DNA of 64,000 nucleotides from the NCBI GenBank assembly GCA_026770705.1, contig JANJGN010000189.1, positions 682,001 through 746,000 on the forward strand, given 5' to 3'. Below are positions 4,780 through 31,560 of the stretch, piece after piece; position 1 is the stretch's first letter; every line of letters starts with the position of its first letter. Under the pieces are notes generated by a model. The model saw only the letters and a program-made list of their open reading frames with translations, was not told where the DNA came from and did not search any database. Origin of the DNA: Isurus oxyrinchus (taxonomy: Eukaryota). Position numbers and translations under genes: made by a program.

Positions 4780-4919
4780 TCAAACAGTCTGTCGACTTCC
4801 TTTCACTGTTTGTCTCTCCCAGACACAGACTCCAGCGATAGTGATAACCACAGCCACAAGGAATATCACAGCTCGTATTCCCAGGATCAGGATCACGTGC
4901 AGAATCTCTCCTCCACTGT
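4780..4919 (-). CDS. Gene B terminal exon: transmembrane segment with Arg and short tail, (D)SGGEILHVILILGIRAVIFLVAVVITIAGVCVWERQTVKGSRQTV*
   Basis: Pyrimidine-rich acceptor (TTCTCTAG), phase 1, hydrophobic stretch with a single Arg, TGA at 4782-4780. Not in the ORF track; translated by hand. Confidence 0.85.
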
Positions 4920-6033
4920 CTAGAGAACACACAGAAAGAAATCATCACTGACTCTCCGCTTTCAATCTCTCACTCTGGCTGAACAATCAAGCTTCATATC
5001 ACTGCAACATTTGCTGTAATATTGACCCATCCACTGGGATTCAATGTGGAATGAATGTTTTCATTGTAAACACTCTAAGAGTGGACAATCGGAACTTTCC
5101 CCTTAGCGTGGAACATTGGTGAGAATGGATCATTGTGCTGTTGGACTCCCTGTCCAATGTTTCTCTCCATCGCTGTGTACAGGATTGTGCTGTAGAAAAT
5201 TCTGGAAACGTTTAGTGCCGGGTGGAAATCCATCTCGGACGCGTGTGCGAATCGGGCAGGATCGAGATGGACTCCCCCACGGACTTACACCCCCCGCTTA
5301 ATAAACAGTTCCAATCTTTACCCAGAGAGAGGGGAGAATGTGGAACTCGCTCCCACAGGGAATGGTTGAGGTGAATAGTAGGAAATTAGGAAGTGAAATT
5401 GCTTGAAAAGCTTGGAGATGCAAGGGTTAAGTGCGACCGTGCTACCACTGGTGGGAGAGTGTAACTACAGCGTGATGTTTACATAGGCAATCCCCATTAT
5501 GAACATGGACATCATGTGAAAAATGGGCACTGGAAAGCTGAGAACTTGATGTAAGCTTTTCAGCAACAGGAATTCCCTTCCTAAACCTCTCCACTTCCCT
5601 CTTATTCTCAGATACTCAAACAAAATTTCACACAAAATCACGTAAGGAGGAATTGGGACTGGTGACTGGTCAAAGAGTTAGATTTCAGGAAGGTTCTTAA
5701 AGTAGGATAGAGAGTTCGAGAGGCAGAGAGTATCTGTGAGTATCTCTGTGCATCTGAGTGTCTGTAATAGACTTTGCAATTTCCATATTCTTCCATAAAT
5801 ATGAAAGGGAACACAAATCCCAGAATCCAGGTCAACTCTCCGGTGCAGCACTGAGGGAGGTCAGGTAATCCACAGGGGAGTATGTGCTAGTGTGTTTGTT
5901 TGTGAGTGTGTCTTTGTGTGTGCTCATAGATGTGGGATTGTGTGTCTGCAGGTGTCTATTTAAGGCTGGATATTTATGTGTGTTTCTGTAGTGTTTCAAT
6001 CTGAGAGAGATGTTGAAGTTTGTCTTAACTAAC

Positions 6034-6168
6034 GTTCCACAGTGATGGTTATGAACCCCTCCACTGCTCCATGTTCATTCTCTGAGCACACTGATAGTCT
6101 CCAGTGTCCCTGGATGTAACGTGAGGAATCACCAACCACAGCTCATTGTTGGAACTTGTTCTGTTCAT
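6034..6168 (-). pseudogene. 3' half of an Ig-domain exon (NELWLVIPHVTSRDTGDYQC), 5' half missing, with a 1-nt frameshift
   Basis: DxGxYxC motif. It is 1 nt shorter than the mirror copy at 41747-41882, and no upstream Ig half is visible. Confidence 0.7.
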
Positions 6169-6508
6169 TGTGATATTCAGATGTCAGGACCGGACTCAAC
6201 AAGACAGATTGCAGGTTTACCAACAGAAAGTGAACAACAATTTATATTTAAAGGGAAGAGAGTGCTGGTTAATCAGCAAGTGGTCTCTGATTGGAGGAGG
6301 TGTTGCCATGGAAAATAATGTGTGTGAGATGTAAAGTTTAGACAGCTTGTCTCTTCATTCAGCAACAATCAAATAAAGATCAGTTAACTTCTATCGACTG
6401 TGAAGCACTTTGAGAGGCATGAGAATGTGGACACTGAGAACGGGCTGCACTGTCAGAGGGTCAGCGCTGAGGGAGTGCTGATGTAGAATGAAGGGTGTCC
6501 GTACTTAC

Positions 6509-6805
6509 CTTGCACAGTTAGTACGAGGGTCCGCTCCGATGAAACAGATGGATATCTCACTCTGCAGCTGAGAGTGTGTCCGTGGTGTTTGAGTGATGGG
6601 ATCAGGGTCAGAACAGAAGTATAGGTCAGAGTGACACCATGCTGAGTTACAGTGTTTGAGACTGATCCAGGTACGTCAGTGGGAGTGTCCCAGGTTAAGA
6701 CAGGTGCTGCTGTTCCATTGCACGTTGTGTTGAAGGTGCAGCTTACATCCACACGCTTTCCTGCAATAATTTCAGCAGGGAATATCGTGGGTTTATCTGT
6801 GAAAT
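6509..6805 (-). CDS. Gene B C2-set Ig exon (DFTDKPTIFPAEIIAGKRVDVSCTFNTTCNG...LTW...LSCRV...LTVQ)
   Basis: AG/GT boundaries, 297 nt, phase 1-1. B-strand Cys, extra BC-loop Cys, Trp and F-strand Cys as in Siglec domain 2. Confidence 0.9.
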
Positions 6806-7533
6806 CTAACAGACAGAGAATGGATCCTTTTAGAGAAATATAACGTGAAGCATCAGTTCAAATAGAAATCACAGTCCCACAAGAAAAAGCACTTTTACAA
6901 GGATGATATCAGATCTGAGAGGTTACAATGATTAGGAGAGAATTTCCTGCTTTGAGACTTTGGTGTTTCTGTCTCTCAGCTTAATACACGTTCACTCCGA
7001 GACACTTGAACTGATAATAGTGGGTGAGGGTGGTGGAGCAGACCAGAGTTTGGAGTGCACTAACCCATCAGTCCCTCAGCGATCTAGGCCATTTTTTACT
7101 TTGCAATTTGTGGGAGCTTGCTGTGCGCAAATTGGTTGCTGTGTTTCCCACATTACAATAGTAACTAAAATTCAGGAATCAGCTCATTGGCTGTGAAGTG
7201 ATTTGGTCCATGCTGAGGTGGTGAAAAGTGCTACAGAATTGTGAATCTTTCTTCTGTCGCTAAGTCAGACTTCGAGACAGGATTAGAGAGATCGATAGTA
7301 GTGGATAACCTGATAACATTGATGGACACAGTCAATACATTTAATCATTGATATTAAAGTGAGTATTAGAGGTTGCTTTAGGAGTGAACTGGAAGCTATC
7401 ACCAGGTTATTGAGAATCAGACAGTGTGTTATAATAAGCTGTGTTTTGTGTTAATATGTAAACGTCACAGTTTGTGTTGTTTCCCATTGAGTGTTGAATG
7501 TGAATTGTTGAGTAATTATAACACAGCACTTAC

Positions 7534-7899
7534 CAGAAACGTGAACCTGGGTTACAGGGTAATAGTTATGGCTCGGACAATTGTCAAATTCTATTCTGAA
7601 AAAATAAGGTCCTGCATCTTCCCGTCTGATGTTGTTTATAATCAGGGAACAGTCACCATCTTTCAGGTCTCCAGACAGCCGGGTCCGATGGTGGAACTGT
7701 GGTAACTCGTGACTGTGATCCTTGGAGTGAAAGGCTATAGACGATGTTCTCCATTCCTCATTATTAAGCCAGACTCCACGTCGCGGTTGGTTTTCCAGAC
7801 ATGATGGATAACTATAATGACATGGAATCTGTACACAGGAACCTTCCTGCACTGTCACCTCTCGTGGAGTGTCACCTTTCCACTCTTGTGAGGGTTCAG
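7534..7899 (-). CDS. Gene B Siglec-type V-set exon (7th, membrane-proximal), Arg+ (YFFR)
   Basis: CCCAG acceptor and GTAAGT donor, 366 nt, phase 1-1. Motifs SCVQIPC, W, GDCSL and DAGPYFFR. Confidence 0.9.
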
Positions 7900-7959
7900 C
7901 TGGGGAGAGAAATCTCAATATTTAACTCTGAATGGTTTGTGGATCCACTGAACCCGATA

Positions 7960-8750
7960 TTTACAGATGAGGCTGAATTGGGGGGATGGTCAATACTGAG
8001 GAGAATGGCAACAAATTATATTGTCAGGAAGAATAGAAAAACAGGATATAATTTAAATGGTGACAGGCTGCAGTATGCAGTACAGAGGGATCTGGGTGTC
8101 CTGGTACATGAATCACAGAAAGTCAGCATTCAGGAACAACACGGAATGAGGAAGGCAAGTGGAATGTTGGCCTTTATTGCAAAGGGATGGAGTATAAAAG
8201 GAGGGAAGTCTTGCAACAGCTACACAGGGCGTTAGTGAGATTGTAACAGGATCATTGTGTACAGGCAGTTCAGAGAAGCTTCACTGGGCTGATTCCTGGG
8301 ATTAAAGGGTTTGTCCTGTGAGGAAATGTTGAGCAGGTTGGGCCTGTATCCATTGGAGTTTAGAAGAATGAGGGGTGACCTTATTGAAACATATCCGATT
8401 CCGAGGGGGCTTGACAGGGTGGATGCTGGGAGGATGTTTCCCCCTCGTGGGGGAATCTAGAACCAGGGAGCACAGTTTCGGAATGAGGACTCTCCCATTT
8501 AAGACTGAGATGAGGAGGAATTTCCTCTCTCAGAGGGGCGCTAGCCTGTGGAATTCTCTTCCCCAGAGAGCAGTGGAGGCTGGGCCATTGAATAGACTCA
8601 AGGCTGAGTGAGGCAGGTTTTTGATCGACAAGAGAGTCAAGGGTTTGGGGGACAGGCAGGAAAATGGAGTTAAGGCCACAACCAGATCAGTGAGAGCAGG
8701 CTGGAGGGGCCGAATGGCCTGCTCCTGTCCCTATTTCTTATGTTCCTACA
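7960..8750 (+). mobile_element. CR1 LINE fragment, repeated in each 2.3-kb unit and at ~54830-55640 (-)
   Basis: QRDLGVLVHESQKVS...RKASGMLAFI and FKTEMRRNF...WNSLPQRAVEA peptides, with frameshifts. Confidence 0.85.
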
Positions 8751-9835
8751 TTCTTACCTTCTTAAAATATTAAAGCTGCAGAAAAAACATGCAAGTGACT
8801 GACCCGCTCGACCCACCTTCCATCTGGGGGTCCCATGGGGAGGACCCTTCCTGAGCCAGATCCACCAGCCAACATGGTCTGGATCCGAGCACAGGAGACA
8901 CGGGGGGGGAGTGACTAACAGGCTCCTTGTGACAGGCCCCGTCTGTCCAATGGCTGGCTTTCAGCTGCCAAGGCCAGAGTTGTCCTTGCTAAAACCGGCT
9001 CAGGACAGGCCAGGACCCCTGTGCAGACCCCCTCCAGCGCTGCAGCCTCTGTACAAACCCCTCATGCGCTTGTGGAGAGACACAAACAAGGCTGCTCATT
9101 ACCGAGGAGAATCCCCTCTACAGACTAAGGTGCTGACTCATCACCCTAAACTCGGCAAATGAGGAGGCTCTCGCTCGGTATCGGGGCTTGGCATTCGCTC
9201 AATAAAAATAATCAAATGACATTTTGGTCAGAAATCTAAGGAGGTTGTACATTCCCTCAAAAATAAGACTCGATCTGGGGTCGAGAGTCAAAGGGCAACA
9301 ACTTATATTTTCACAACAACTTTAACATGACAAATCACTCCAAGGTGCTACACAGGAGCGTCATAAAACAAAGTATGTCACCCAGACACGTGGAGATATT
9401 AGCGACAGCTGACCAGAAGAGGTCGGTGTTATGGAGAGACAGAGAGAAAGAGACAGAGAGAGAGAGAGAGAGAGGGAGAGGAAGAGGGAGAGGGAGAGGT
9501 TTAGGGTGGGAAGTCTAGGGTGGTGAAAGGCGCTGTAGAAATGTAAATCTTTCTTCTGTCGATATGTCAGACTTCAAGACAGGATTTGAGAGATTGATGG
9601 GAGTGGATAAACTGATAACATTGATAGACACAGTCAACACATTTAATCATTGATATTAAAGTGAGTATTAGACATTGCTTTAGGACTGAACTGGAAGCTA
9701 TCACCAGGTTATTGAGAATCAGACAGTGTGTTATAATAAACTGTGTTTTGTGTTAATATGTAAACGTCACAGTTTGTGTTAATTCCCATTGAGTGTTGAA
9801 TGTGAATTGTTGAGTAATTATAACACAGCACTTAC

Positions 9836-10201
9836 CAGAAACGTGAACCTGGGTTACAGGGTAATAGTTATGGCTCGGACCATTGTCAAATTCTATTCTG
9901 AAAAAATAAGGTCCTGCATCTTCCCATGTGATGTTGTTTATAATCAGGGAACAGTCGCCATCTTTCAGGTCTCCAGACAGCCGGGTCCGATGGTGGAACC
10001 GTGGTAACTCGTGACTGTGATCCTTGGAGTGAAAGGCTATAGACGATGTTCTCCATTCCTCATTATTAAGCCAGACTCCACGTCGCGGTTGGTTTTCCAG
10101 ACATGATGGATAACTATAATGACATGGAATCTGTACACAGGAACCTTCCTGCACTGTCACCTCTCGTGGAGTGTCACCTTTCCACTCTTGTGAGGGTTCA
10201 G
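9836..10201 (-). CDS. Gene B V-set exon (6th), Arg+
   Basis: Canonical splice sites, 366 nt, open frame. Confidence 0.88.
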
Positions 10202-12136
10202 CTGGGGAGAGAAATCTCAATATTTAACTCTGAATGGTTTGTGGATCCACTGAACCCGATATTTACAGATGAGGCTGAATTGGGGGGATGGTCAATACTG
10301 AGGAGAATGGCAATAAATTATATTGTCAGGAAGAATAGAAAAACAGGATATAATTTAAATGGTGACAGGCTGCAGTATGCAGTACAGAGGGATCTGGGTG
10401 TCCTGGTACATGAATCACAGAAAGTCAGCATTCAGGAACAACACGGAATGAGGAAGGCAAGTGGAATGTTGGCCTTTATTGCAAAGGGATGGAGTATAAA
10501 AGGAGGGAAGTCTTGCAACAGCTGCACAGGGCGTTAGTGAGATTGTAACAGGATCATTGTGTACAGGCAGTTCAGAGAAGCTTCACTGGGCTGATTCCTG
10601 GGATTAAAGGGTTTGTCCTGTGAGGAAATGTTGAGCAGGTTGGGCCTGTATCCATTGGAGTTTAGAAGAATGAGGGGTGACCTTATTGAAACATATCCGA
10701 TTCCGAGGGGGCTTGACAGGGTGGATGCTGGGAGGATGTTTCCCCCTCGTGGGGGAATCTAGAACCAGGGAGCACAGTTTCAGAATGAGGGCTCTCCCAT
10801 TTAAGACTGAGATGAGGAGGAATTTCCTCTCTCAGAGGGGCGCTAGCCTGTGGAATTCTCTTCCCCAGAGAGCAGTGGAGGCTGGGCCATTGAATAGACT
10901 CAAGGCTGAGTGAGGCAGGTTTTTGATCGACAAGAGAGTCAAGGGTTTGGGGGACAGGCAGGAAAATGGAGTTAAGGCCACAACCAGATCAGTGAGAGCA
11001 GGCTGGAGGGGCCGAATGGCCTGCTCCTGTCCCTATTTCTTATGTTCCTACATTCTTACCTTCTTAAAATATTAAAGCTGCAGAAAAAACATGCAAGTGA
11101 ATGACCCGCTCGACCCACCTTCCATCTGGGGGTCCCATGGGGAGGACCCTTCCTGAGCCAGATCCACCAGCCAACATGGTCTGGATCCGAGCACAGGAGA
11201 CACGGGGGGGAGTGACTAACAGGCTCCTTGTGACAGGCCCCGTCTGTCCAATGGCTGGCTTTCAGCTGCCAAGGCCAGAGTTGTCCTTGCTAAAACCGGC
11301 TCAGGACAGGCCAGGACCCCTGTGCAGACCCCCTCCAGCGCTGCAGCCTCTGTACAAATCCCTCATGCGCTTGTGGAGAGACACAAACAAGGCTGCACAT
11401 TACCGAGGAGAATCCCCTCTACAGACTAAGGTGCTGACTCATCACCCTAAACTCGGCAAATGAGGAGGCTCTCGCTCGGTATCGGGGCTTGGCATTCGCT
11501 CAATAAAAATAATCAAATGACATTTTGGTCAGAAATCTAAGGAGGTTGTACATTCCCTCAAAAATAAGACTCGATCTGGGGTCGAGAGTCAAAGGGCAAC
11601 AACTTATATTTTCACAACAACTTTAACATGACAAATCACCTCAAGGTGCTACACAGGAGCGTCATAAAACAAAGTATGTCACCCAGACACGTGGAGATAT
11701 TAGCGACAGCTGACCAGAAGAGGTCGGTGTTATGGAGAGACAGAGAGAAAGAGACAGAGAGAGAGAGAGAGAGAGGGAGAGGAAGAGGGAGAGGGAGAGG
11801 TTTAGGGTGGGAAGTCTAGGGTGGTGAAAGGCGCTGTAGAAATGTAAATCTTTCTTCTGTCGATATGTCAGACTTCAAGACAGGATTTGAGAGATTGATG
11901 GGAGTGGATAAACTGATAACATTGATAGACACAGTCAACACATTTAATCATTGATATTAAAGTGAGTATTAGACATTGCTTTAGGACTGAACTGGAAGCT
12001 ATCACCAGGTTATTGAGAATCAGACAGTGTGTTATAATAAACTGTGTTTTGTGTTAATATGTAAACGTCACAGTTTGTGTTAATTCCCATTGAGTGTTGA
12101 ATGTGAATTGTTGAGTAATTATAACACAGCACTTAC

Positions 12137-12502
12137 CAGAAACGTGAACCTGGGTTACAGGGTAATAGTTATGGCTCGGACCATTGTCAAATTCTATTCT
12201 GAAAAAATAAGGTCCTGCATCTTCCCATGTGATGTTGTTTATAATCAGGGAACAGTCGCCATCTTTCAGGTCTCCAGACAGCCGGGTCCGATGGTGGAAC
12301 CGTGGTAACTCGTGACTGTGATCCTTGGAGTGAAAGGCTATAGACGATGTTCTCCATTCCTCATTATTAAGCCAGACTCCACGTCGCGGTTGGTTTTCCA
12401 GACATGATGGATAACTATAATGACATGGAATCTGTACACAGGAACCTTCCTGCACTGTCACCTCTCGTGGAGTGTCACCTTTCCACTCTTGTGAGGGTTC
12501 AG
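12137..12502 (-). CDS. Gene B V-set exon (5th), Arg+
   Basis: Canonical splice sites, 366 nt. Protein identical to the 9836-10201 copy. Confidence 0.88.
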
Positions 12503-14437
12503 CTGGGGAGAGAAATCTCAATATTTAACTCTGAATGGTTTGTGGATCCACTGAACCCGATATTTACAGATGAGGCTGAATTGGGGGGATGGTCAATACT
12601 GAGGAGAATGGCAATAAATTATATTGTCAGGAAGAATAGAAAAACAGGATATAATTTAAATGGTGACAGGCTGCAGTATGCAGTACAGAGGGATCTGGGT
12701 GTCCTGGTACATGAATCACAGAAAGTCAGCATTCAGGAACAACACGGAATGAGGAAGGCAAGTGGAATGTTGGCCTTTATTGCAAAGGGATGGAGTATAA
12801 AAGGAGGGAAGTCTTGCAACAGCTGCACAGGGCGTTAGTGAGATTGTAACAGGATCATTGTGTACAGGCAGTTCAGAGAAGCTTCACTGGGCTGATTCCT
12901 GGGATTAAAGGGTTTGTCCTGTGAGGAAATGTTGAGCAGGTTGGGCCTGTATCCATTGGAGTTTAGAAGAATGAGGGGTGACCTTATTGAAACATATCCG
13001 ATTCCGAGGGGGCTTGACAGGGTGGATGCTGGGAGGATGTTTCCCCCTCGTGGGGGAATCTAGAACCAGGGAGCACAGTTTCGGAATGAGGGCTCTCCCA
13101 TTTAAGACTGAGATGAGGAGGAATTTCCTCTCTCAGAGGGGCGCTAGCCTGTGGAATTCTCTTCCCCAGAGAGCAGTGGAGGCTGGGCCATTGAATAGAC
13201 TCAAGGCTGAGTGAGGCAGGTTTTTGATCGACAAGAGAGTCAAGGGTTTGGGGGACAGGCAGGAAAATGGAGTTAAGGCCACAACCAGATCAGTGAGAGC
13301 AGGCTGGAGGGGCCGAATGGCCTGCTCCTGTCCCTATTTCTTATGTTCCTACATTCTTACCTTCTTAAAATATTAAAGCTGCAGAAAAAACATGCAAGTG
13401 AATGACCCGCTCGACCCACCTTCCATCTGGGGGTCCCATGGGGAGGACCCTTCCTGAGCCAGATCCACCAGCCAACATGGTCTGGATCCGAGCACAGGAG
13501 ACACGGGGGGGAGTGACTAACAGGCTCCTTGTGACAGGCCCCGTCTGTCCAATGGCTGGCTTTCAGCTGCCAAGGCCAGAGTTGTCCTTGCTAAAACCGG
13601 CTCAGGACAGGTCAGGACCCCTGTGCAGACCCCCTCCAGCGCTGCAGCCTCTGTACAAACCCCTCATGCGCTTGTGGAGAGACACAAACAAGGCTGCTCA
13701 TTACCGAGGAGAATCCCCTCTACAGACTAAGGTGCTGACTCATCACCCTAAACTCGGCAAATGAGGAGGCTCTCGCTCGGTATCGGGGCTTGGCATTCGC
13801 TCAATAAAAATAATCAAATGACATTTTGGTCAGAAATCTAAGGAGGTTGTACATTCCCTCAAAAATAAGACTCGATCTGGGGTCGAGAGTCAAAGGGCAA
13901 CAACTTATATTTTCACAACAACTTTAACATGACAAATCACCTCAAGGTGCTACACAGGAGCGTCATAAAACAAAGTATGTCACCCAGACACGTGGAGATA
14001 TTAGCGACAGCTGACCAGAAGAGGTCGGTGTTATGGAGAGACAGAGAGAAAGAGACAGAGAGAGAGAGAGAGAGAGGGAGAGGAAGAGGGAGAGGGAGAG
14101 GTTTAGGGTGGGAAGTCTAGGGTGGTGAAAGGCGCTGTAGAAATGTAAATCTTTCTTCTGTCGATATGTCAGACTTCAAGACAGGATTTGAGAGATTGAT
14201 GGGAGTGGATAAACTGATAACATTGATAGACACAGTCAACACATTTAATCATTGATATTAAAGTGAGTATTAGACATTGCTTTAGGACTGAACTGGAAGC
14301 TATCACCAGGTTATTGAGAATCAGACAGTGTGTTATAATAAACTGTGTTTTGTGTTAATATGTAAACGTCACAGTTTGTGTTAATTCCCATTGAGTGTTG
14401 AATGTGAATTGTTGAGTAATTATAACACAGCACTTAC

Positions 14438-14803
14438 CAGAAACGTGAACCTGGGTTACAGGGTAATAGTTATGGCTCGGACCATTGTCAAATTCTATTC
14501 TGAAAAAATAAGGTCCTGCATCTTCCCATGTGATGTTGTTTATAATCAGGGAACAGTCGCCATCTTTCAGGTCTCCAGACAGCCGGGTCCGATGGTGGAA
14601 CCGTGGTAACTCGTGACTGTGATCCTTGGAGTGAAAGGCTATAGACGATGTTCTCCATTCCTCATTATTAAGCCAGACTCCACGTCGCGGTTGGTTTTCC
14701 AGACATGATGGATAACTATAATGACATGGAATCTGTACACAGGAACCTTCCTGCACTGTCACCTCTCGTGGAGTGTCACCTTTCCACTCTTGTGAGGGTT
14801 CAG
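14438..14803 (-). CDS. Gene B V-set exon (4th), Arg+
   Basis: Canonical splice sites, 366 nt. Protein identical to the two preceding copies. Confidence 0.88.
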
Positions 14804-16743
14804 CTGGGGAGAGAAATCTCAATATTTAACTCTGAATGGTTTGTGGATCCACTGAACCCGATATTTACAGATGAGGCTGAATTGGGGGGATGGTCAATAC
14901 TGAGGAGAATGGCAATAAATTATATTGTCAGGAAGAATAGAAAAACAGGATATAATTTAAATGGTGACAGGCTGCAGTATGCAGTACAGAGGGATCTGGG
15001 TGTCCTGGTACATGAATCACAGAAAGTCAGCATTCAGGAACAACACGGAATGAGGAAGGCAAGTGGAATGTTGGCCTTTATTGCAAAGGGATGGAGTATA
15101 AAAGGAGGGAAGTCTTGCAACAGCTACACAGGGCGTTAGTGAGATTGTAACAGGATCATTGTGTACAGGCAGTTCAGAGAAGCTTCACTGGGCTGATTCC
15201 TGGGATTAAAGGGTTTGTCCTGTGAGGAAATGTTGAGCAGGTTGGGCCTGTATCCATTGGAGTTTAGAAGAATGAGGCGTGACCTTATTGAAACATATCC
15301 GATTCCGAGGGGGCTTGACAGGGTGGATGCTGGGAGGATGTTTCCCCCTCGTGGGGGAATCTAGAACCAGGGAGCACAGTTTCAGAATGAGGGCTCTCCC
15401 ATTTAAGACTGAGATGAGGAGGAATTTCCTCTCTCAGAGGGGCGCTAGCCTGTGGAATTCTCTTCCCCAGAGAGCAGTGGAGGCTGGGCCATTGAATAGA
15501 CTCAAGGCTGAGTGAGGCAGGTTTTTGATCGACAAGAGAGTCAAGGGTTTGGGGGACAGGCAGGAAAATGGAGTTAAGGCCACAACCAGATCAGTGAGAG
15601 CAGGCTGGAGGGGCCGAATGGCCTGCTCCTGTCCCTATTTCTTATGTTCCTACATTCTTACCTTCTTAAAATATTAAAGCTGCAGAAAAAACATGCAAGT
15701 GACTGACCCGCTCGACCCACCTTCCATCTGGGGGTCCCATGGGGAGGACCCTTCCTGAGCCAGATCCACCAGCCAACATGGTCTGGATCCGAGCACAGGA
15801 GACACGGGGGGGGAGTGACTAACAGGCTCCTTGTGACAGGCCCCGTCTGTCCAATGGCTGGCTTTCAGCTGCCAAGGCCAGAGTTGTCCTTGCTAAAACC
15901 GGCTCAGGACAGGCCAGGACCCCTGTGCAGACCCCCTCCAGCGCTGCAGCCTCTGTACAAACCCCTCATGCGCTTGTGGAGAGACACAAACAAGGCTGCT
16001 CATTACCGAGGAGAATCCCCTCTACAGACTAAGGTGCTGACTCATCACCCTAAACTCGGCAAATGAGGAGGCTCTCGCTCGGTATCGGGGCTTGGCATTC
16101 GCTCAATAAAAATAATCAAATGACATTTTGGTCAGAAATCTAAGGAGGTTGTACATTCCCTCAAAAATAAGACTCGATCTGGGGTCGAGAGTCAAAGGGC
16201 AACAACTTATATTTTCACAACAACTTTAACATGACAAATCACCTCAAGGTGCTACACAGGAGCGTCATAAAACAAAGTATGTCACCCAGACACATGTGGA
16301 GATATTAGCGACAGCTGGCCAGAAGAGGTCGGTGTTATGGAGAGACAGAGAGAAAGAGACAGAGAGAGAGAGAGAGAGAGAGGGAGAGGAAGAGGGAGAG
16401 GGAGAGGTTTAGGGTGGGAAGTCTAGGGTGGTGAAAGGCGCTGTAGAAATGTAAATCTTTCTTCTGTCGATATGTCAGACTTCAAGACAGGATTTGAGAG
16501 ATTGATGGGAGTGGATAAACTGATAACATTGATAGACACAGTCAACACATTTAATCATTGATATTAAAGTGAGTATTAGACATTGCTTTAGGACTGAACT
16601 GGAAGCTATCACCAGGTTATTGAGAATCAGACAGTGTGTTATAATAAACTGTGTTTTGTGTTAATATGTAAACGTCACAGTTTGTGTTAATTCCCATTGA
16701 GTGTTGAATGTGAATTGTTGAGTAATTATAACACAGCACTTAC

Positions 16744-17112
16744 CAGAAACGTGAACCTGGGTTACAGGGTAATAGTTATGGCTCGGACCATTGTCAAATT
16801 CTATTCTGAAAAAATAAGGTCCTGCATCTTCCCGTCTGATGTTGTTTATAATCAGGGAACAGTCGCCATCTTTCAGGTCTCCAGACAGCCGGGTCCGATG
16901 GCGGAACCGTGGTAACTCGTGACTGTGATCCTTGGAGTGAAAGGCAATGGGAGCCCAGGGAATCTGTTTCTCATTATTAAACCAGAGTCCACCTCGCGGT
17001 TGGTTTTCCAGACACGATGGATAACTGTAATGACATGGAATCTGTACACACGAACCTTCCTGAGCTGTCACCTCTCGTGGAGTGTCACCTTTCCACTCTT
17101 GTGACAGTCCAA
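16744..17112 (-). CDS. Gene B V-set exon (3rd), Arg+, KQIPWAP loop class
   Basis: Canonical splice sites, 369 nt, open frame. Confidence 0.88.
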
Positions 17113-19048
17113 CTGGGGAGAGAAATCTCAATATTTATCTCTGGATGGTTTGTGGATCCACTAGACTCAAAATTTACAGATGAGGCTGAATTGGGGGGAT
17201 GGTCAATACTGAGGAGAATGGCAACAAATTATTTTGGCAGGAAGAATAGAAAAACAGGATATTATTTAAATGGAGACAGGCTGCAGAATGCAGTACAGAG
17301 GGATCTGGGTGTCCTTGTACATGAATCACAGAAAGTCAGCATTCAGGAACACCACGGAATGAGGAAGGCAAGTGGAATGTTGGCCTTTATTGCAAAGGGA
17401 TGGAGTATAAAAGGAGGGAAGTCTTGCAACAGCTGCACAGGGCGTTAGTGAGATTGTAACAGGATCATTGTGTACAGGCAGTTCAGAGAAGCTTCACTGG
17501 GCTGATTCCTGGGATTAAAGGGTTTGTCCTGTGAGGAAATGTTGAGCAGGTTGGGCCTGTATCCATTGGAGTTTAGAAGAATGAGGGGTGACCTTATTGA
17601 AACATATCCAATTCCGAGGGGGCTTGACAGGGTGGATGCTGGGAGGATGTTTCCCCCTCGTGGGGGAATCTAGAACCAGGGAGCACAGTTTCAGAATGAG
17701 GGCTCTCCCATTTAAGACTGAGATGAGGAGGAATTTCCTCTCTCAGAGGGGCGCTAGCCTGTGGAATTCTCTTCCCCAGAGAGCAGTGGAGGCTGGGCCA
17801 TTGAATAGACTCAAGGCTGAGTGAGGCAGGTTTTTGATCGACAAGAGAGTCAAGGGTTTGGGGGACAGGCAGGAAAATGGAGTTAAGGCCACAACCAGAT
17901 CAGTGAGAGCAGGCTGGAGGGGCCGAATGGCCTGCTCCTGTCCCTATTTCTTATGTTCCTACATTCTTACCTTCTTAAAATATTAAAGCTGCAGAATAAA
18001 CATGCAAGTGACTGACCCGCTCGACCCACCTTCCATCTGGGGGTCCCATGGGGAGGACCCTTCCTGAGCCAGATCCACCAGCCAACATGGTCTGGATCCG
18101 AGCACAGGAGACACGGGGGGGGAGTGACTAACAGGCTCCTTGTGACAGGCCCCGTCTGTCCAATGGCTGGCTTTCAGCTGCCAAGGCCAGAGTTGTCCTT
18201 GCTAAAACCGGCTCAGGACAGGCCAGGACCCCTGTGCAGACCCCCTCCAGCGCTGCAGCCTCTGTACAAACCCCTCATGCGCTTGTGGAGAGACACAAAC
18301 AAGGCTGCTCATTACCGAGGAGAATCCCCTCTACGGACTAAGGGGCTGACTCATCACCCTAAACTCGGCAAATGAGGAGGCTCTCGCTCGGTATCGGGGC
18401 TTGGCATTCGCTCAATAAAAATAATCAAATGACATTTTGGTCAGAAATCTAAGGAGGTTGTACATTCCCTCAAAAATAAGACTCGATCTGGGGTCGAGAG
18501 TCAAAGGGCAACAACTTATATTTTCACAACAACTTTAACATGACAAATCACCTCAAGGTGCTACACAGGAGCGTCATAAAACAAAGTATGTCACCCAGAC
18601 ACGTGTAGATATTAGCGACAGCTGACCAGAAGAGGTCGGTGTTATGGAGAGACAGAGAGAAAGAGACAGAGAGAGAGAGAGAGAGAGGGAGAGGAAGAGG
18701 GAGAGGGAGAGGTTTAGGGTGGGAAGTCTAGGGTGGTGAAAGGCGCTGTAGAAATGTAAATCTTTCTTCTGTCGATATGTCAGACTTCAAGACAGGATTT
18801 GAGAGATTGATGGGAGTGGATAAACTGATAACATTGATAGACACAGTCAACACATTTAATCATTGATATTAAAGTGAGTATTAGACATTGCTTTAGGACT
18901 GAACTGGAAGCTATCACCAGGTTATTGAGAATCAGACAGTGTGTTATAATAAACTGTGTTTTGTGTTAATATGTAAACGTCACAGTTTGTGTTAATTCCC
19001 ATTGAGTGTTGAATGTGAATTGTTGAGTAATTATAACACAGCACTTAC

Positions 19049-19417
19049 CAGAAACGTGAAGCTGGGTTACAGGGTAATAGTTATGGCTCGGACCATTGTC
19101 AAATTCTATTCTGAAAAAATAAGGTCCTGCATCTTCCCGTCTGATGTTGTTTATAATCAGGGAACAGTCGCCATCTTTCAGGTCTCCAGACAGCCGGGTC
19201 CGATGGCGGAACCGTGGTAACTCGTGACTGTGATCCTTGGAGTGAAAGGCAATGGGAGCCCAGGGAATCTGTTTCTCATTATTAAACCAGAGTCCACCTC
19301 GCGGTTGGTTTTCCAGACACGATGGATAACTGTAATGACATGGAATCTGTACACACGAACCTTCCTGAGCTGTCACCTCTCGTGGAGTGTCACCTTTCCA
19401 CTCTTGTGACAGTCCAA
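19049..19417 (-). CDS. Gene B V-set exon (2nd), Arg+, KQIPWAP loop class
   Basis: Canonical splice sites, 369 nt, open frame. Confidence 0.88.
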
Positions 19418-21129
19418 CTGGGGAGAGAAATCTCAATATTTATCTCTGGATGGTTTGTGGATCCACTAGACTCAAAATTTACAGATGAGGCTGAATTGGG
19501 GGGATGGTCAATACTGAGGAGAATGGCAACAAATTATTTTGGCAGGAAGAATAGAAAAACAGGATATTATTTAAATGGAGACAGGCTGCAGAATGCAGTA
19601 CAGAGGGATCTGGGTGTCCTTGTACATGAATCACAGAAAGTCAGCATTCAGGAACACCACGGAATGAGGAAGGCAAGTGGAATGTTGGCCTTTATTGCAA
19701 AGGGATGGAGTATAAAAGGAGGGAAGTCTTGCAACAGCTGCACAGGGCGTTAGTGAGATTGTAACAGGATCATTGTGTACAGGCAGTTCAGAGAAGCTTC
19801 ACTGGGCTGATTCCTGGGATTAAAGGGTTTGTCCTGTGAGGAAATGTTGAGCAGGTTGGGCCTGTATCCATTGGAGTTTAGAAGAATGAGGGGTGACCTT
19901 ATTGAAACATATCCAATTCCGAGGGGGCTTGACAGGGTGGATGCTGGGAGGATGTTTCCCCCTCGTGGGGGAATCTAGAACCAGGGAGCACAGTTTCGGA
20001 ATGAGGACTCTCCCATTTAAGACTGAGATGAGGAGGAATTTCCTCTCTCAGAGGGGCGCTAGCCTGTGGAATTCTCTTCCCCAGAGAGCAGTGGAGGCTG
20101 GGCCATTGAATAGACTCAAGGCTGAGTGAGGCAGGTTTTTGATCGACAAGGGAGTCAAGGGTTTGGGGGACAGGCAGGAAAATGGAGTTAAGGCCACAAC
20201 CAGATCAGCGAGGGCAGGCTGGAGGGGCCGAATGGCCTGCTCCTGTCCCTATTTCTTATGTTCCTACATTCTTACCTTCTTAAAATATTAAAGCTGCAGA
20301 ATAAACATGCAAGTGACTGACCCGCTCGACCCACCTTCCATCTGGGGGTCCCATGGGGAGGACCCTTCCTGAGCCAGATCCACCAGCCAACATGGTCTGG
20401 ATCCGAGCACAGGAGACACGGGGGGGAGTGACTAACAGGTTCCTTGTGACAGGCCCTGTCTGTCCAATGGCTGGCTTTCAGCTGCCAAGGCCAGAGTGGT
20501 CCTTGCTAAAACCGGCTCAGGACAGGCCAGGACCCCTGTGCAGACCCCCTCCAGCGCTGCAGCCTCTGTACAAATCCCTCATGCGCTTGTGGAGAGACAC
20601 AAACAAGGCTGTACATTACCGAGGAGAATCCCCTCTACGGACTAAGGGGCTGACTCATCACCTTGAACTCAGCAAATGAGGAGGCTCTCGCTCGGTATCG
20701 GGGCTTGGCATTCGCTCAATAAAAATAATCAAATGACACTTTGGTCAGAAATCTAAGCAGGTTGTACATTCCCTCAAAAATAAGACTCAATCTGGGGTCG
20801 AGGGTCAAAGGGCAACAACTTATATTTTCACAACAACTTGAACATGACAAATCACCCCAAGGTGCTACACAGGAGCGTCATAAAACAAAGTATGTCACGC
20901 AGACACATGTGGAGATATTAGCGACAGCTGACCAGAAGGGATCGGTGTTATGGAGAAACTTAAAAGAGGGATGAAATGGTTAGTGAGAGAGAGAGAGTGA
21001 GTGTGAGGGATGGAGAGGGCTTAAGGGAGGGTATTACGGAGCTCGGTCCCCAGGCAGCTGAAGGCATGGCCACCAATGTTAGAGTGTTGAGATCGGGGGA
21101 TGGTCAAGAGGCTGGAATTGGAGGAGCGC

Positions 21130-21590
21130 AGAGACCTCTGAAGGTTGGTGGGTCTGGAGGAGGTTACAGAGATAGGGAGGGTTGTAGGGGCTGGAGGAGG
21201 TTACAGAGATAGCGAGGTTTGTAGTGATTGGAGGAGTTATAGCGATAGGGAGGTTTTTAGGGGCTGGAAAAGTTAAGAGAGATTGGGAGAGTGTAGGGTC
21301 TGGAGGAGTTTGCAGAGGTCGGGAGGGTTGTAGTGACTGGGGCAGGTTACAGGGGCAGGGAAAGTTGTCGGGACTGGAGCAGGCTACAGAGATAGGGAAG
21401 CTTTTAGGGGCAGGAGGAAGTTACAGAAATAGGGAGGTTTGTAGTGGCTGGAGGAGGTTGCAGAGATTGGTAGGTTTGTTGGGCAGGATGAATTTACAGA
21501 TATAGGGAAGCGGTAGAGGCTTGAAGAGGTTACAGAGAATGGGATGGTTGTAGGTACTGGAGGAGGACGAGAAGATTACAGGGATAGTGA
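21130..21590. repeat. ~35-bp degenerate minisatellite (GGAGGAGGTTACAGAGATAGGGAGGGTTGTAGGGGCT-like) within a LINE 3' region
   Basis: Tandem repetition. A longer mirror copy lies at ~53820-54750. Confidence 0.8.
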
Positions 21591-21599
21591 GGAAACAAA

Positions 21600-22821: not shown

Positions 22822-23196
22822 CAGAAACGTGAAGCTGGGTTTCAGGACGGTCGTTGTATCTATTCCTGTTGTCAAATTCTAGGCTGAATAAATAATATCC
22901 TGCATCTTCCCGTCTGATGTTGTTTATAATCAGGGAACAGTCGCCATCTTTCAGGTCTCCAGACAGCTGGGTCCGATGGTGGAACTGTGGTAACTCGCGA
23001 TTATGATCCTTGGAGTGAAAGGCTATAGACCGTTCATTCCATTTTTCCCAATTCCTTCTCATATACCAGATTCCGACTGGTGATCTCGCTACTAAATATG
23101 ATGGATAACTGTAATTACATGGAATCTGTACACACGAACCTTCCTGCGCTGTCACCTCTCCTGGAGTGTCACCTTTCCACACTTGTGATAGTCCAA
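22822..23196 (-). CDS. Gene B N-terminal V-set exon, essential Arg replaced by Ser (DAGYYLFSLEF)
   Basis: CCCTAG acceptor and GTAAGT donor, 375 nt, phase 1-1, open frame. Confidence 0.88.
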
Positions 23197-25846: not shown

Positions 25847-26029
25847 CCATCCAGTCCAAGTTTCACTTTGGCCTGTGAGCAGAACACAGCTCACACAGTT
25901 TGGCTGCAGGTGTCTCCCAGCTTTCTATCCTTGTATATCTGTTCTCATGTCCCCATTCTAAATAACTGAACCCACAATGTATTTACCCAATTCCGTATCA
26001 GTGGCTGGTGCCTTTATATCATTATAAAA

Positions 26030-29000: not shown

Positions 29001-29900
29001 TCAAATGTAGACAGACCAAGCAAGATCCACACATTGCAATGTTACATCTGAGATCAACACCTACAACTGCAACTTTGTTAAATTCATTCATGGGATGTGG
29101 GAGTCACTGGTCAGGCCAGGATTTATTACCCATCCCTAATGTAAGAGTCAACCACATTGACGTGGAGTCTGGAGTCACATGTCGGCCAGGCAATTTTGTT
29201 CCCTAAAGGGCACTGGTGAACCAGGTGGGATTTCCAACAATGGTTTTGTGGTCATCACTAGACTTTGAATTTCATCTTTTTATTAAATTCAAATTCCATC
29301 ATCTATTATGACAGGATTTGAACTCATATTTTCAGGACATTACCCTGGGTCTCTGAATTACTCGTCCAGCAACAATACCACTACACCATCACCTCACCTT
29401 ATTGCATCACTGACAGAGATCATGTTTGGTGGGCCAGTAGTGACCAATTTCGCTATTCTTACCCATTCTACTCTCTCAGAAACCAGAGGGCAACTTTTAA
29501 AACTACAAGAGAAGATAAGGAATGTTCATGATAAAAATGGAGGTGCACAGTTGCCAAGTTTACAGTTGGGACAAGTTCACATCCAGGATCCCACAGAAGG
29601 TTCATGATCACCAGCCGAGGTGACAAGGATTTGTTCAGAACCAAGGGCCTATGGAGTCAAACACACAAGGGCACAGCGGTGAGGCGGAACTGAGGATAAA
29701 TCAGATCCATTCCCGCTCCTATTCCATCGAGGAGAAGATCCCACATGAAATCAGGAACAACATCCAAGGGTGACAATCCCACAGATCACTGTGAGCAGTT
29801 AAAGACACCTCCAGACAAGGTAACCAGCACAAGATCTGGGTGTACCAGAAGGTTAAATCCACACTTTAGAGACTCAAATATTCAACAGTTCCATGCACTT
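26030..29900 (+). mobile_element. Degenerate Ty3/Gypsy-like LTR retrotransposon internal region (gag, zinc knuckle, integrase pieces; one internal fragment inverted)
   Basis: CGRCG...CPA...CKACGRKG knuckle and integrase-like WPGMNNDLE and MLHLRSTP fragments, with many stops. Partial mirror at ~47900-50120. Confidence 0.75.
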
Positions 29901-30925
29901 ATGTAATTGTCAATAAATATGAACATGATATGAGAAACCGCTTGCTCCCTGCCCTTCTGAAAGATCCATTCCTGCAGCAGGAGCCTGGAGAGTTATTGAA
30001 AAGGGATTAAATTTATCGGATTGTAGAATGATCCGGAACAGAAGGAAGACATTTGGCCCATCGAGCCTGTGCTGGGCCGTTGAAAGATCTGTCCAATTAT
30101 TCCCACTCTCACCTCTGCTCTTTCCTCCACAACCCTGCAAAATTTCCCCTTCAAGTATTTATCCAGTTCCCCTTCTGAAAGTTCCTGTTGAATCTGCTTC
30201 CACCGCCCTTTCAGGCAGTGAGTCAATGGTCTCTCTCTGAGCTGCAAAGTGATAAGTTTCAATGAAATATAAACTCTGCAGCAGATCAGAAACAATCATG
30301 ATAACTCAGAATATTTGACAGTTTTACATACAGACAGCTTTGCCTCCCTTCTCTCTATCAGTTATCTTGCTATCTTATCGAATTTTCTAGCATGGTGAGA
30401 ATGGACAGGAAGTGTGACGCTGAACTGCCTGTCTAATCTAAGAGCTTCTGTGTTGTCTTCATGGGAAATTCTGATGAAAATCAGCAAGAGAGAAACATTT
30501 CAGGGCATTGATATCGGAGTGCTTGCATCAGGATAGACTTCATCCCCCAGTTTTTATCCCTGCTTCTCTATTCAGCCGATCGCTCCCCTGTCACTCGCTG
30601 ACCTACACTGGCTCCCAGTCCAGCAATGACTCAATTTTCAAAATCTCTTCATTGATTCCTTATCCCTCCATCCTCCCTCTCCACTCCCTATCACTGTCAC
30701 CTCCTCCAGCCCTGAAACCCTTTGAGGTCTCTGCTGTCCTGCAGTTCTGCTGTCAGACAGGGAGTCAGTGTATATCAGTGAGCACAGGGGTGATGGGTGA
30801 ATGGGACTTGGTGTGAGTTTGTACACTGGCTCACTGCTGAATCAGTTCCCTATCACAGCTCAATAAGAATGATCTTTTACAAAGACTATTAGCCATAAGT
30901 CTGTCCAAGTTGACGATGATATTAC

Positions 30926-30965
30926 CTTGGAGAAGTGACAGGAGGAAGTAGGATTTCCCGATCAT
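30926..30965 (-). CDS. Gene B leader exon, coding part MIGKSYFLLSLLQ(V)
   Basis: ATG at 30965, 40 nt, GTAAT donor, phase 1 compatible with the V exons. Confidence 0.82.
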
Positions 30966-31415
30966 TGTCCACTCCCAGATATTCCTTTAGCTTCTGACTC
31001 TCAAACTGTGAAAGAGAAAGGAGTTAATGAGACCTCACCTCTTGTCCGACAGCTCTCGAGAGATCAGAACTGCTTTTACACATTGTCTACACAGACTAAT
31101 TTGGTTCTCTGTGGGATGATAGGTGCTCTGCAGAGAGTTAAAAAGCTTTAAAAAAATAAATCAATGAAGGACTTGCATTTCTATATCGTATTTCAGCACC
31201 TCAGGATGTCCCAAAGCTCATGTCCCTGCACTTCCCTCATCCCTTGAGCTAGAAAGATGTTCTGTACAACAGACTTGAGCCTCACACCCAGATCTCAATA
31301 ATCAGTAGAAATCTTTCAAAGGCATCAATCATTGGAATTTGTCTTTATAAAGTCACAACATCAACAAAGGACTGTGTTGGTCGTGGAAGTGAATTCCAAT
31401 CGTTCCATTACTTAC

Positions 31416-31560
31416 CCAGGACCTGTCCGACTGCTCGCCTGGGGAGGAACTGCCCACACGCTCTGCCTGGGCTGAATGACCTCTTCCTGTGCTGCTCCCT
31501 CTGTGTATTTAATGAGAAAGGGTTGATGTGTCTCTGTGAGACAAAATGAGGAAGTTGGAT
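31416..31560 (-). promoter_or_regulatory. Gene B putative promoter and non-coding exon 1, with PU.1/ETS box (31543-31556)
   Basis: Homologous to the other three promoter blocks, with a G|GTAAGT donor at 31416. Confidence 0.55.

What the first reader, a model, noticed from the sequence alone, without database searches (positions are those of the whole stretch)
4780..31560. Activating Siglec-like receptor with seven tandem V-set domains, six with an intact sialic-acid-binding Arg
Seen: one leader, seven open phase 1-1 V exons with canonical splice sites, one C2 exon and one Arg-TM exon. Joined, they give 3054 nt (1017 aa plus stop). Known: Siglecs normally have a single N-terminal V-set ligand domain (SIGLEC12 has two) and gain length through C2 domains. 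Inference: exon amplification has produced either a polyvalent high-avidity sialoglycan sensor coupled to an ITAM adaptor, or a cassette system in which symmetric exons are used combinatorially. This is the best candidate for an undescribed system in the window.
Basis: partly seen in the sequence, partly recalled or inferred. Interest (0 to 1): 0.92.

Follow-up and report, generated by a model that had tools for sequence, protein, structure and literature searches.

The report
Shark Siglec gene with seven V-set exons
A shark immune-receptor gene of the sialic-acid-lectin (Siglec) family really does carry seven in-frame lectin-domain exons, six of them in a very young 2.3-kb tandem repeat, ahead of an activating-type membrane anchor; many-lectin-domain Siglecs turn out to be widespread in sharks and rays, but whether all seven domains reach one protein is still open.

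Summary
On the minus strand lie a leader (30965-30926), seven open phase 1-1 V-set exons, one C2 exon (6805-6509) and an Arg-bearing TM/stop exon (4919-4780). Exon lengths sum to 3054 nt. Six V exons keep the Siglec YFFR arginine; the leader-proximal one has Ser.

The six inner V exons sit in a 2.3-kb unit repeated six times. Each unit is told apart by substitutions shared among subsets of units, so the array looks real, but no independent read depth was obtained.

RNA contigs from two related species show V->C2 and C2->TM splicing at the predicted sites. No V->V junction was among the joints shown, and the contig layout hints that V->C2 is the usual continuation.

The architecture is not unique. 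Public elasmobranch models already hold 2-5 tandem Siglec V domains, and one catshark model has five V domains plus the same Arg-TM. Non-first V domains carry an extra BC-loop Cys at the position C2 uses for the interdomain disulfide.

A neighbouring inverted inhibitory-type paralogue shares a ~540-bp, 98-100% identical tract with units 5 and 6, as in Siglec-5/14 pairs.

Verdict: a new variant of a known kind, and the largest V array found. The scan noted similar amplified Siglec exons elsewhere in this genome.

The parts
31416..31508 (-). Upstream exon-like element (candidate non-coding exon 1) ending in a GTAAGT donor. It is related in sequence to a cytoplasmic exon of other shark Siglecs.
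   Evidence: The same element lies about 410-510 nt upstream of all four leaders in the window: 1237-1157(-), 38579-38683(+), 46365-46445(+).
30926..31005 (-). Leader exon. The acceptor follows 'cacag' at about 31005. The ATG is at 30965 and the CDS runs 30965-30926 (MIGKSYFLLSLLQ plus 1 nt, phase 1, donor GTAATA).
   Evidence: The signal peptide is identical to that of Carcharodon and Rhincodon models P0001-P0003. The block is conserved among the paralogues in the window.
22822..23196 (-). V7, the outer V-set exon, 375 nt, phase 1-1. The canonical Arg is replaced by Ser (YYLFSLE) and there is no BC-loop Cys.
   Evidence: (V-set E 2e-13); tree (outer-V clade with Cetorhinus P0007 d1 and Carcharodon P0163 d1).
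19049..19417 (-). V6, an inner V-set exon of the VGLSQ type, 369 nt, with Arg intact.
   Evidence: 94% to domain 2 of Carcharodon P0163.
16744..17112 (-). V5, an inner V-set exon, 369 nt. It differs from V6 at 1 nt.
14438..14803 (-). V4, an inner V-set exon of the AEPSQ type, 366 nt, with Arg intact and an NIT sequon.
12137..12502 (-). V3, with an exon sequence identical to V2 and V4.
9836..10201 (-). V2, with an exon sequence identical to V3 and V4. RNA contigs join a V 3' end laid here to the C2 exon.
   Evidence: (joint 9836->6805 in X3 and X19).
7534..7899 (-). V1, the inner V exon next to C2. It has 5 substitutions against V2-4, one of which adds an extra Cys (DNCPSH).
7132..20950 (-). 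Tandem array of six 2301-2309-bp units. Each unit holds one V exon plus an intron containing high-copy interspersed repeat.
   Evidence: Outside an exon-centred patch of about 620 bp, units 2-5 differ by 4-8 substitutions per 1.6 kb. Unit 6 diverges near its upstream edge. The variants are shared among subsets of units.
6509..6805 (-). C2-set exon, 297 nt, phase 1-1, with three Cys including the BC-loop Cys.
   Evidence: C2-set_2 E 2.6e-9; aligns to MAG and CD33 domain 2, both N-terminal Cys matched; both splice sites used in RNA.
6034..6183 (-). Relic 3' half of a stalk Ig exon with a broken frame. It is skipped in the X3 and X19 contigs, but its donor is joined to the TM exon in one organism-B contig.
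   Evidence: tblastn and translation; joint 6034->4919 in X17.
4780..4919 (-). TM and tail exon: SGGEILHVILILGIRAVIFLVAVVITIAGVCVWERQTVKGSRQTV followed by the stop codon.
   Evidence: (joint 6509->4919 in X3 and X19); the same TM and tail occur in catshark models P0009 and P0085.
55353..56480 (+). Inner-V unit of the neighbouring inverted inhibitory-type paralogue (gene C), the partner in the inferred gene-conversion tract.
   Evidence: From -300 to +300 around the exon start it is 98-100% identical to unit 5. Beyond that it is 95-97% identical, while units 2 and 5 are identical to each other.

Best explanation
Gene A is a real member of an elasmobranch-wide group of Siglec-like receptors with several V-set domains, and it is of the activating type. 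The basic layout is leader, an outer V, one or more inner V, a C2 domain and then the TM. In gene A, unequal crossing-over has very recently multiplied the inner V exon together with its intron to six copies. Every copy is still open, in phase 1-1 and has consensus splice sites, so any number of them can be included in frame.

The V domains carrying the canonical Arg are inferred to bind sialylated glycans. The Arg in the TM is inferred to recruit an ITAM adaptor of the DAP12 type.

Inner V domains carry a Cys in the BC loop, at the place where the C2 domain carries its interdomain Cys. Consecutive domains could therefore be linked head to tail by disulfides, which would make the V module chainable (inferred).

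The gene sits beside an inverted inhibitory-type paralogue with which it exchanges V-exon sequence by gene conversion. This is paired-receptor behaviour as in Siglec-5/14.

Shown here: the exon anatomy, the family identity, the array structure, V->C2->TM splicing in RNA, and the conversion tract. Not shown: how many V exons one mRNA holds. The RNA contigs hint that it is usually fewer than seven.
For: Anatomy and splice sites.

Family identity: Pfam V-set (E about 1e-12 to 1e-13), Ig_CD22 (E about 1e-10 to 3e-9) and C2-set_2. Best PDB matches are Siglec-5 (E 1.6e-13), Siglec-8, CD33, Siglec-10, Siglec-7, MAG and sialoadhesin, with YFFR aligned. The C2 cysteines align with MAG domain 2.

Array: six units, each with its own combination of substitutions that are shared among subsets of units.

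RNA: joints 6509->4919 and 9836->6805 with GT..AG ends, in X3 (organism A) and X19 (organism B).

Public models: 2-5 tandem Siglec V domains in Scyliorhinus, Mustelus, Cetorhinus, Carcharodon, Hypanus and Mobula. S. torazame P0159 has 5 V plus a partial V, C2 and the same Arg-TM.

Tree: the four V positions of the ray proteins are each orthologous between Mobula and Hypanus, so the multi-V layout is old and maintained.

Cysteine: the BC-loop Cys is present in 28 of 38 non-first V domains against 6 of 117 first V domains.

Neighbour: gene C has an uncharged TM and a LLYANPQV/TEYAQIRF tail. The conversion tract is shown. The paired-receptor precedent is PMC6288428.
Against: No V->V junction appears among the 15 joints listed, and 95 more were not shown.

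In X3, one contig (depth 473) passes from an inner-V 3' end into the first 18 nt of C2. It merges with a second path into the C2 contig (depth 660). That is not what a V->V majority would give. So long V chains are not dominant in that RNA, or that animal has fewer units, or paralogues supply the signal.

Copy number was not checked with independent raw reads, because all runs laid were contigs.

V7 has lost the Arg and V1 has gained an odd Cys. A relic exon sits in the last intron, and neighbouring gene B has a stop codon in its V exon. The locus is therefore in flux, and part of it may be decaying.

Ligand binding, adaptor pairing and the disulfide chain are all inferences.
Confidence: 0.6

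Rival explanations
1. All seven V exons are normally spliced into one mRNA. The product would be a receptor of about 1017 residues with six sialic-acid sites in series, long and polyvalent. Its size would vary with array copy number, as apolipoprotein(a) does with its kringle IV-2 repeats.
For: The splice sites are identical, strong and symmetric, and the introns are nearly identical, so by default every exon should be included. Catshark models include 4-5 near-identical V domains in series. The cysteine count is even for any outer-V plus n inner-V plus C2 chain.
Against: No V->V joint was listed in the RNA contigs. The X3 and X19 contigs run straight from a V 3' end into C2. Summed V word depth is only about 1.4-2.7 times that of C2, not 6 times; the tool itself warns that this measure is weak.
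Confidence: 0.2
2. The array is over-expanded or otherwise mis-assembled, and the animal really has one to three inner V units.
For: V2, V3 and V4 are identical in their exons, and their units differ by only 4-6 substitutions in 1.6 kb. No independent depth or spanning-read check was possible. The RNA contigs do not need more than one inner V.
Against: Each of the six units has its own combination of substitutions in complex sequence, and several are shared by non-adjacent units. Two exon types stand in an ordered layout. Comparable arrays occur in other elasmobranch assemblies.
Confidence: 0.12
3. The extra V exons are a neutral or decaying by-product of unequal crossing-over in an unstable gene cluster. 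The working product is the ancestral two-V or one-V receptor, or the gene is on its way to becoming a pseudogene.
For: V7 has lost the Arg and V1 has gained an unpaired Cys. There is a relic half-exon. Gene B next door has an in-frame stop in its V exon, and gene C's outer V has also lost the Arg. dN/dS among the V types is 0.4-1.1, with no sign of positive selection. Many other exon amplifications are noted in this genome.
Against: All seven exons and all fourteen splice sites are intact. RNA shows the C2 and TM exons spliced as predicted. The units are so young that intactness says little in either direction.
Confidence: 0.15

Closest known systems
Human/primate Siglec-12 (Siglec-XII)
   Same: It is a CD33-related-type Siglec with more than one V-set domain before the C2 domains (PMC6288428). 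One of its V domains lacks the sialic-acid Arg in some lineages.
   Different: Siglec-12 has two V domains and an ITIM tail. Here there are seven V exons, six near-identical, the Arg is lost in the outer domain only, and the gene ends in an Arg-TM with a short tail.
Siglec-5/Siglec-14 and Siglec-11/Siglec-16 paired receptors
   Same: In each pair an activating member (basic residue in the TM, DAP12-coupled) and an inhibitory member keep their ligand-binding exons alike by repeated gene conversion (PMC6288428). Here gene A units 5 and 6 share a tract of about 540 bp, 98-100% identical, with inhibitory-type gene C.
   Different: The pair here is in a shark and in inverted orientation. The converted exon is only one or two of six repeats. 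Opposite signalling is inferred from sequence motifs only.
Scyliorhinus torazame model P0159 (named 'polymeric immunoglobulin receptor-like'), S. canicula Siglec-12 isoform X1 (P0158), and the four-V models P0005 (Hypanus) and P0177 (Mobula)
   Same: They have the same leader, an outer V followed by near-identical inner V domains of the AEPSQEWKG type with a BC-loop Cys, and the same C2 domain. P0159 also has the same Arg-TM.
   Different: These are automatic models with 4-5 V domains, while the window has 7 V exons. Inner V domains group by species in the tree, so the amplifications are independent or homogenised. None is described in the papers I could search.
Sialoadhesin (Siglec-1)
   Same: It is a very long Siglec. 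By established knowledge its length is thought to lift the binding site above cis ligands.
   Different: Siglec-1 gains length through 16 C2-set domains behind a single V. Here length would come from the V-set lectin domains themselves.
LPA kringle IV-2 repeat (from my own knowledge, not tested here)
   Same: A young tandem repeat of exon-plus-intron units inside a gene, with all copies in frame and copy number setting protein size.
   Different: It is an unrelated protein family, and inclusion of all copies is proven for LPA but not here.

Membership tests
Siglec (I-type sialic-acid lectins) | V-set Ig domain of the Siglec type at the N-terminus | tested here: met
   Pfam V-set E 2e-13 to 4e-12 and Ig_CD22 E 1e-10 to 3e-9 for V1, V4, V6 and V7. 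Best PDB matches are Siglec-5, -8, CD33, -10, -7, MAG and sialoadhesin.
Siglec (I-type sialic-acid lectins) | Conserved F-strand arginine that salt-bridges the sialic-acid carboxylate | tested here: met
   YFFRIE in V1-V6 aligns with YFFRVE of Siglec-5 and YFFRLE of Siglec-8. It is not met in V7 (YLFSLE).
Siglec (I-type sialic-acid lectins) | Siglec cysteine pattern: CxxxxC at strand B, a Cys in strand E, and an extra Cys in the BC loop of the following C2 domain for an interdomain disulfide | tested here: met
   SCVQIPC and GDCSL occur in every V and align with LCVLVPC and NCSL of Siglec-5. SCTFNTTC in C2 aligns with SCMVPDNC of MAG domain 2. The bonds themselves were not tested.
Siglec (I-type sialic-acid lectins) | Binding of sialylated glycans | not testable with these tools
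   Needs glycan arrays with Arg-to-Ala controls.
CD33-related Siglecs | Orthology or clade membership with the mammalian CD33-related genes | tested here: inconclusive
   The best PDB matches are CD33-related members, but MAG and sialoadhesin score nearly as well. No tree including mammalian Siglecs was built.
Activating, DAP12-type-coupled Siglecs (Siglec-14, -15, -16, -H) | Basic residue inside the TM helix and a short tail without ITIM or ITSM | tested here: met
   ILHVILILGIRAVIFLVAVVITIAGVCVW is followed by ERQTVKGSRQTV and the stop; the tail has no Tyr. RNA contigs splice this exon to C2.
Activating, DAP12-type-coupled Siglecs (Siglec-14, -15, -16, -H) | Physical association with an Asp-bearing ITAM adaptor | not testable with these tools
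   No adaptor gene lies in the window. Needs co-precipitation.
Paired activating/inhibitory receptors kept alike by gene conversion | A neighbouring gene with the opposite signalling end and a tract of raised identity limited to the ligand-binding exon | tested here: met
   Gene C has an uncharged TM and a TEYAQIRF tail. From -300 to +300 around the exon start, unit 5 is 98-100% identical to gene C, against 95-97% beyond that.
Polymeric immunoglobulin receptor (the name given to the catshark five-V homologue) | Four or five pIgR-type V-set domains, without the Siglec Arg and Cys pattern and without a C2-set domain 2 | tested here: not met
   pIgR chains match only residues 65-103 at E about 1e-6, against E 1e-13 for Siglecs over the whole domain. 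The Siglec Arg, the Siglec cysteines and a Siglec-type C2 exon are all present.

The most novel reading that the evidence does not exclude
The seven exons are spliced into one receptor in which V-set lectin domains are strung together by a chain of interdomain disulfides. Each domain's strand-B Cys would bond to the BC-loop Cys of the next domain. This would give six sialic-acid sites on one activating receptor. Length and valency would vary between individuals with array copy number. It would be a modular, copy-number-tunable lectin unknown among Siglecs.
Probability: 0.2. Interest if true: 0.8.

Novelty: new variant of a known kind. Interest (0 to 1): 0.55.

Why it matters
Textbook Siglecs have one V-set lectin domain (Siglec-12 has two) and lengthen through C2 domains. 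This locus, together with the public shark and ray models it led to, shows that in elasmobranchs the lectin domain itself is a repeatable module. Two to five such domains are annotated elsewhere, seven are encoded here, and the module carries a cysteine that seems made for chaining.

The locus also suggests that activating/inhibitory Siglec pairs kept alike by gene conversion are not a primate peculiarity. I found no paper in the searchable library that describes either point.

If the long form is made, it offers a natural series for testing how valency and reach shape sialoglycan sensing. If it is not made, the locus is a clean example of how unequal crossing-over feeds raw material into immune-receptor genes.

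Tried and rejected
Leader at 31560: there is no ATG-led signal peptide there. A scan with a hydrophobicity filter missed the true leader. It was found from homologues' N-termini.

C2 acceptor: first placed at 6796, then corrected to 6805 by the RNA joints.

Copy number and exon use from depth: all four runs laid were contigs, so depth is one figure per contig and the tool warns against using it. The 'DNA?' run X6 gave figures I could not interpret, so I draw no copy number from it.

The joint 7742->10103 in X3 is not a splice. It is a V5/V6-like contig whose divergent C-C' loop segment did not align.

Positive selection: dN/dS among V types is 0.4-1.1 on few changes, which gives no case.

Intron ORFs: Pfam found nothing for the repeat-derived ORFs.

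Literature: six searches found no description of multi-V Siglecs in cartilaginous fish.

pIgR reading: rejected (see the membership test).

Everything was done exon by exon by reference. The N run 56811-57925 was not filled.

Full report
**What is there.** The gene reads on the minus strand.
- The true leader is at 30965-30926. It encodes MIGKSYFLLSLLQ plus one base and has a GTAATA donor. This is the same signal peptide as in white-shark and whale-shark Siglec models.
- Seven V exons follow: V7 23196-22822 (375 nt), V6 19417-19049 and V5 17112-16744 (369 nt each), and V4 14803-14438, V3 12502-12137, V2 10201-9836 and V1 7899-7534 (366 nt each). Each is open and in phase 1-1. Each is preceded by a pyrimidine tract and AG and followed by GTAAGT.
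- The C2 exon is 6805-6509 (297 nt). I first placed its acceptor at 6796, and the RNA joints moved it to 6805.
- The last exon, 4919-4780, encodes SGGEILHVILILGIRAVIFLVAVVITIAGVCVWERQTVKGSRQTV and the stop.
The boundary codons read from the exon ends are GTT, GTT, GTT, GCT x4, GAT and GAC, none of them a stop. I did not build, search or fold a joined sequence.
- The stretch near 31560 is not the leader. About 31508-31416 is an exon-like element ending in GTAAGT, and the same element precedes every leader in the window by about 450 nt. It is probably a non-coding first exon.

**What family.**
- The V exons match Pfam V-set (E 2e-13 to 4e-12) and the CD22-type first Ig domain. The C2 exon matches C2-set_2.
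- Against solved structures, the best matches are Siglec-5 (E 1.6e-13), Siglec-8, CD33, Siglec-10, Siglec-7, MAG and sialoadhesin. YFFRIE aligns to YFFRVE/YFFRLE, so the sialic-acid arginine is in place in V1-V6. V7 has Ser there.
- The Siglec cysteine pattern is present in the V domains. In the C2 exon, both N-terminal cysteines align with those of MAG domain 2.
- pIgR, the name given to a catshark homologue, matches only a 39-residue stretch at E about 1e-6.

**The array.**
- Six units of 2301-2309 bp run from about 7132 to about 20950.
- Outside an exon-centred patch, units 2-5 differ by only 4-8 substitutions in 1.6 kb. The exons of V2, V3 and V4 are identical, and V1 differs from them at 5 sites.
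- The differences are substitutions in complex sequence. Several are shared by subsets of units, including non-adjacent ones. That pattern fits real paralogous units shuffled by unequal exchange, and it does not fit an assembler copying one unit.
- Units 5 and 6 differ from units 1-4 by about 7% in the exon and about 6% in the 258 bp upstream of it, yet by only about 0.5% elsewhere. Most amino-acid changes fall in the stretch NNEEWRTSS versus NNEKQIPWAP. By alignment this is the C-C' loop region, which sets fine specificity in mammalian Siglecs (established knowledge).
- I could not check copy number independently. Every run offered was stored as contigs, whose depth cannot be used that way.

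**RNA.** One call of read laying was allowed, on 4700-10300.
- In X3 (same organism as the window by its code) and X19 (a close relative), contigs join 6509 to 4919 and a V 3' end to 6805, with GT..AG ends. So V->C2->Arg-TM splicing is real in two species.
- In X3, exon bins stand 10-40 times above most non-repeat intron bins, so the run is RNA.
- No V->V joint is among the 15 joints printed, and 95 others were not shown.
- In X3, a contig of depth 473 has 18 letters on its C2 side and the rest on the V exon. The C2 contig (depth 660) reaches 12 letters into V and stops exactly where V1-5 and V6/V7/gene C differ. In X19, one contig runs 158 nt of V straight into 100 nt of C2.
- If most inner V ends were followed by another V, these paths should break at the exon end. 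I read this as moderate evidence that long V chains are not the main form in those samples.
- Three things could weaken that reading: paralogues sharing the same words, a shorter array in those animals, and graph clean-up.
- A relic half-exon of a stalk Ig domain (6183-6034) is skipped in these contigs, but one organism-B contig joins it to the TM exon.

**Relatives.**
- A full-library search with one V exon found many elasmobranch proteins with several matching stretches.
- Counting full-length V matches gives five in S. torazame P0159, four in S. canicula P0158, Mobula P0177 and Hypanus P0005/P0157, three in Mustelus and Scyliorhinus models, and two in Cetorhinus P0007/P0187 and Carcharodon P0163. 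None has more than five.
- P0159 reads leader, outer V, four AEPSQEWKG-type V, a stretch that looks like read-through, a partial V, C2, and the same Arg-bearing TM. It is the catshark counterpart of gene A.
- In a tree of V domains, V7 falls in an outer-V clade. V5/V6 fall with the second V of Carcharodon and Cetorhinus and with gene C's inner V. V1-V4 form their own clade near the catshark inner V domains.
- In the two rays, each of the four positions pairs with its counterpart in the other species (support 95-100). The four-V layout is therefore old and kept position by position, which is hard to explain unless multi-V proteins are made.
- In sharks the inner V domains group by species, so the amplification is repeated or homogenised.

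**A chainable module.**
- Inner V domains read CVQIPCHYSYPSC. The third Cys lies seven residues after the strand-B Cys, in the BC loop. The C2 domain has its extra Cys six residues after its own strand-B Cys.
- Among distinct V domains of the public models, 28 of 38 non-first domains have this Cys, against 6 of 117 first domains. The sequences are related, so the Fisher P of 8e-17 overstates independence.
- In gene A, V7 lacks this Cys and V6-V1 have it.
- I infer that each domain's first Cys bonds to the next domain's BC-loop Cys, whether the next domain is V or C2. This would give an even cysteine count for any chain length. V1's extra Cys (DNCPSH) is the one misfit.

**Neighbourhood.**
- The window holds three more family members.
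- Gene B (plus strand, leader about 39134) has one V exon with an in-frame stop, then a C2 exon, a stalk exon and the same Arg-TM.
- Gene C (plus strand, leader about 46896) has an outer V (Arg to Met), an inner V, an assembly gap where C2 is expected, an uncharged TM, and a tail with LLYANPQV and TEYAQIRF. It is an inhibitory type.
- A fourth leader lies at 706-668 on the minus strand.
- Gene C's inner-V region is 98-100% identical to unit 5 from -300 to +300 around the exon start, but 95-97% beyond. There, units 2 and 5 are identical to each other. This is a conversion tract between an activating and an inhibitory gene, as described for Siglec-5/14 and Siglec-11/16 (PMC6288428).

**How it most likely works.** Part of the following is inferred.
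- It is a type I receptor on leukocytes whose Arg-bearing V domains bind sialoglycans.
- The TM Arg pairs with the Asp of a DAP12-type adaptor and signals through Syk.
- It acts as the activating counterpart of gene C.
- Unequal crossing-over changes the number of inner V exons, and symmetric phases keep every version in frame.
- My odds: about 0.8 that the array is real; about 0.6 for the whole account above; about 0.2 that the seven-V form is the main product; about 0.12 that the array is an assembly artefact; about 0.15 that the extra exons are neutral or the gene is decaying. These readings overlap.

**Novelty and limits.**
- Six literature searches found no account of multi-V Siglecs in cartilaginous fish. 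The architecture is visible only in automatic annotation.
- Earlier notes of this scan list several other amplified Siglec exons in this genome, including a second seven-V locus of nearly the same span on another piece. I did not check these.
- The N run in gene C was left as it is.

Noticed in passing
window 39875-40249 (+): Gene B is a head-to-head paralogue with the same Arg-TM tail (about 43556-43690). Its only V exon has an in-frame stop (VGLSQD*KGD), so it is probably a pseudogene or the exon is skipped.
   Followed up: partly
window 52216-52593 (+) and 22822-23196 (-): Both outer V exons in the window have lost the sialic-acid Arg, by different changes: FFMIKF in gene C and LFSLEF in gene A. 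The white-shark and basking-shark counterparts keep FFRIEF.
   Followed up: partly
window 31508-31416 (-), 1237-1157 (-), 38579-38683 (+), 46365-46445 (+): An element encoding SSTGRGHSAQAERVGSSSPGEQSDRSW, homologous to a cytoplasmic exon of other shark Siglecs, stands about 410-510 nt upstream of each of the four leaders. In gene A it ends in a GTAAGT donor. It may be a recruited non-coding first exon.
   Followed up: partly
window 35582-35695 (+): An orphan ITIM-type tail exon (DIYANCEFAEDSVYGNL) lies between the promoters of genes A and B and has no nearby Ig exons on its strand.
   Followed up: no
window 6034-6183 (-): A relic 3' half of a stalk Ig exon (NRTSSNNELWLVIPHVTSRDTGDYQC...) with a broken frame sits in the C2-TM intron. 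One organism-B contig joins its donor to the TM exon.
   Followed up: partly
window 56811-57925: Two N runs (199 and 913 bases) fall where gene C's C2 exon would be expected.
   Followed up: no
window 1404-3339, 31769-32080, 45129-46079, 61900-62186; 21143-21566, 53872-54749; 37035-38449: Satellite arrays with periods of 33, 37 and 43 bp recur between the Siglec genes, on both strands. The 33-bp unit also occurs at 6444-6480 inside gene A and is very abundant in all runs laid.
   Followed up: no
window 8066-8813 and the matching part of each unit: The intron of every unit holds a very high-copy interspersed repeat, with word depths in the thousands in all four runs. Its ORFs had no Pfam match.
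   Followed up: partly
V2-V4 exons (9836-10201, 12137-12502, 14438-14803): V2-V4 carry an N-glycosylation sequon (NNITWED) just before the F strand. V1, V5, V6 and V7 lack it (NNIRRED).
   Followed up: no
run X20: A coral metatranscriptome holds 8% of the sampled words of the stretch.
   Followed up: no
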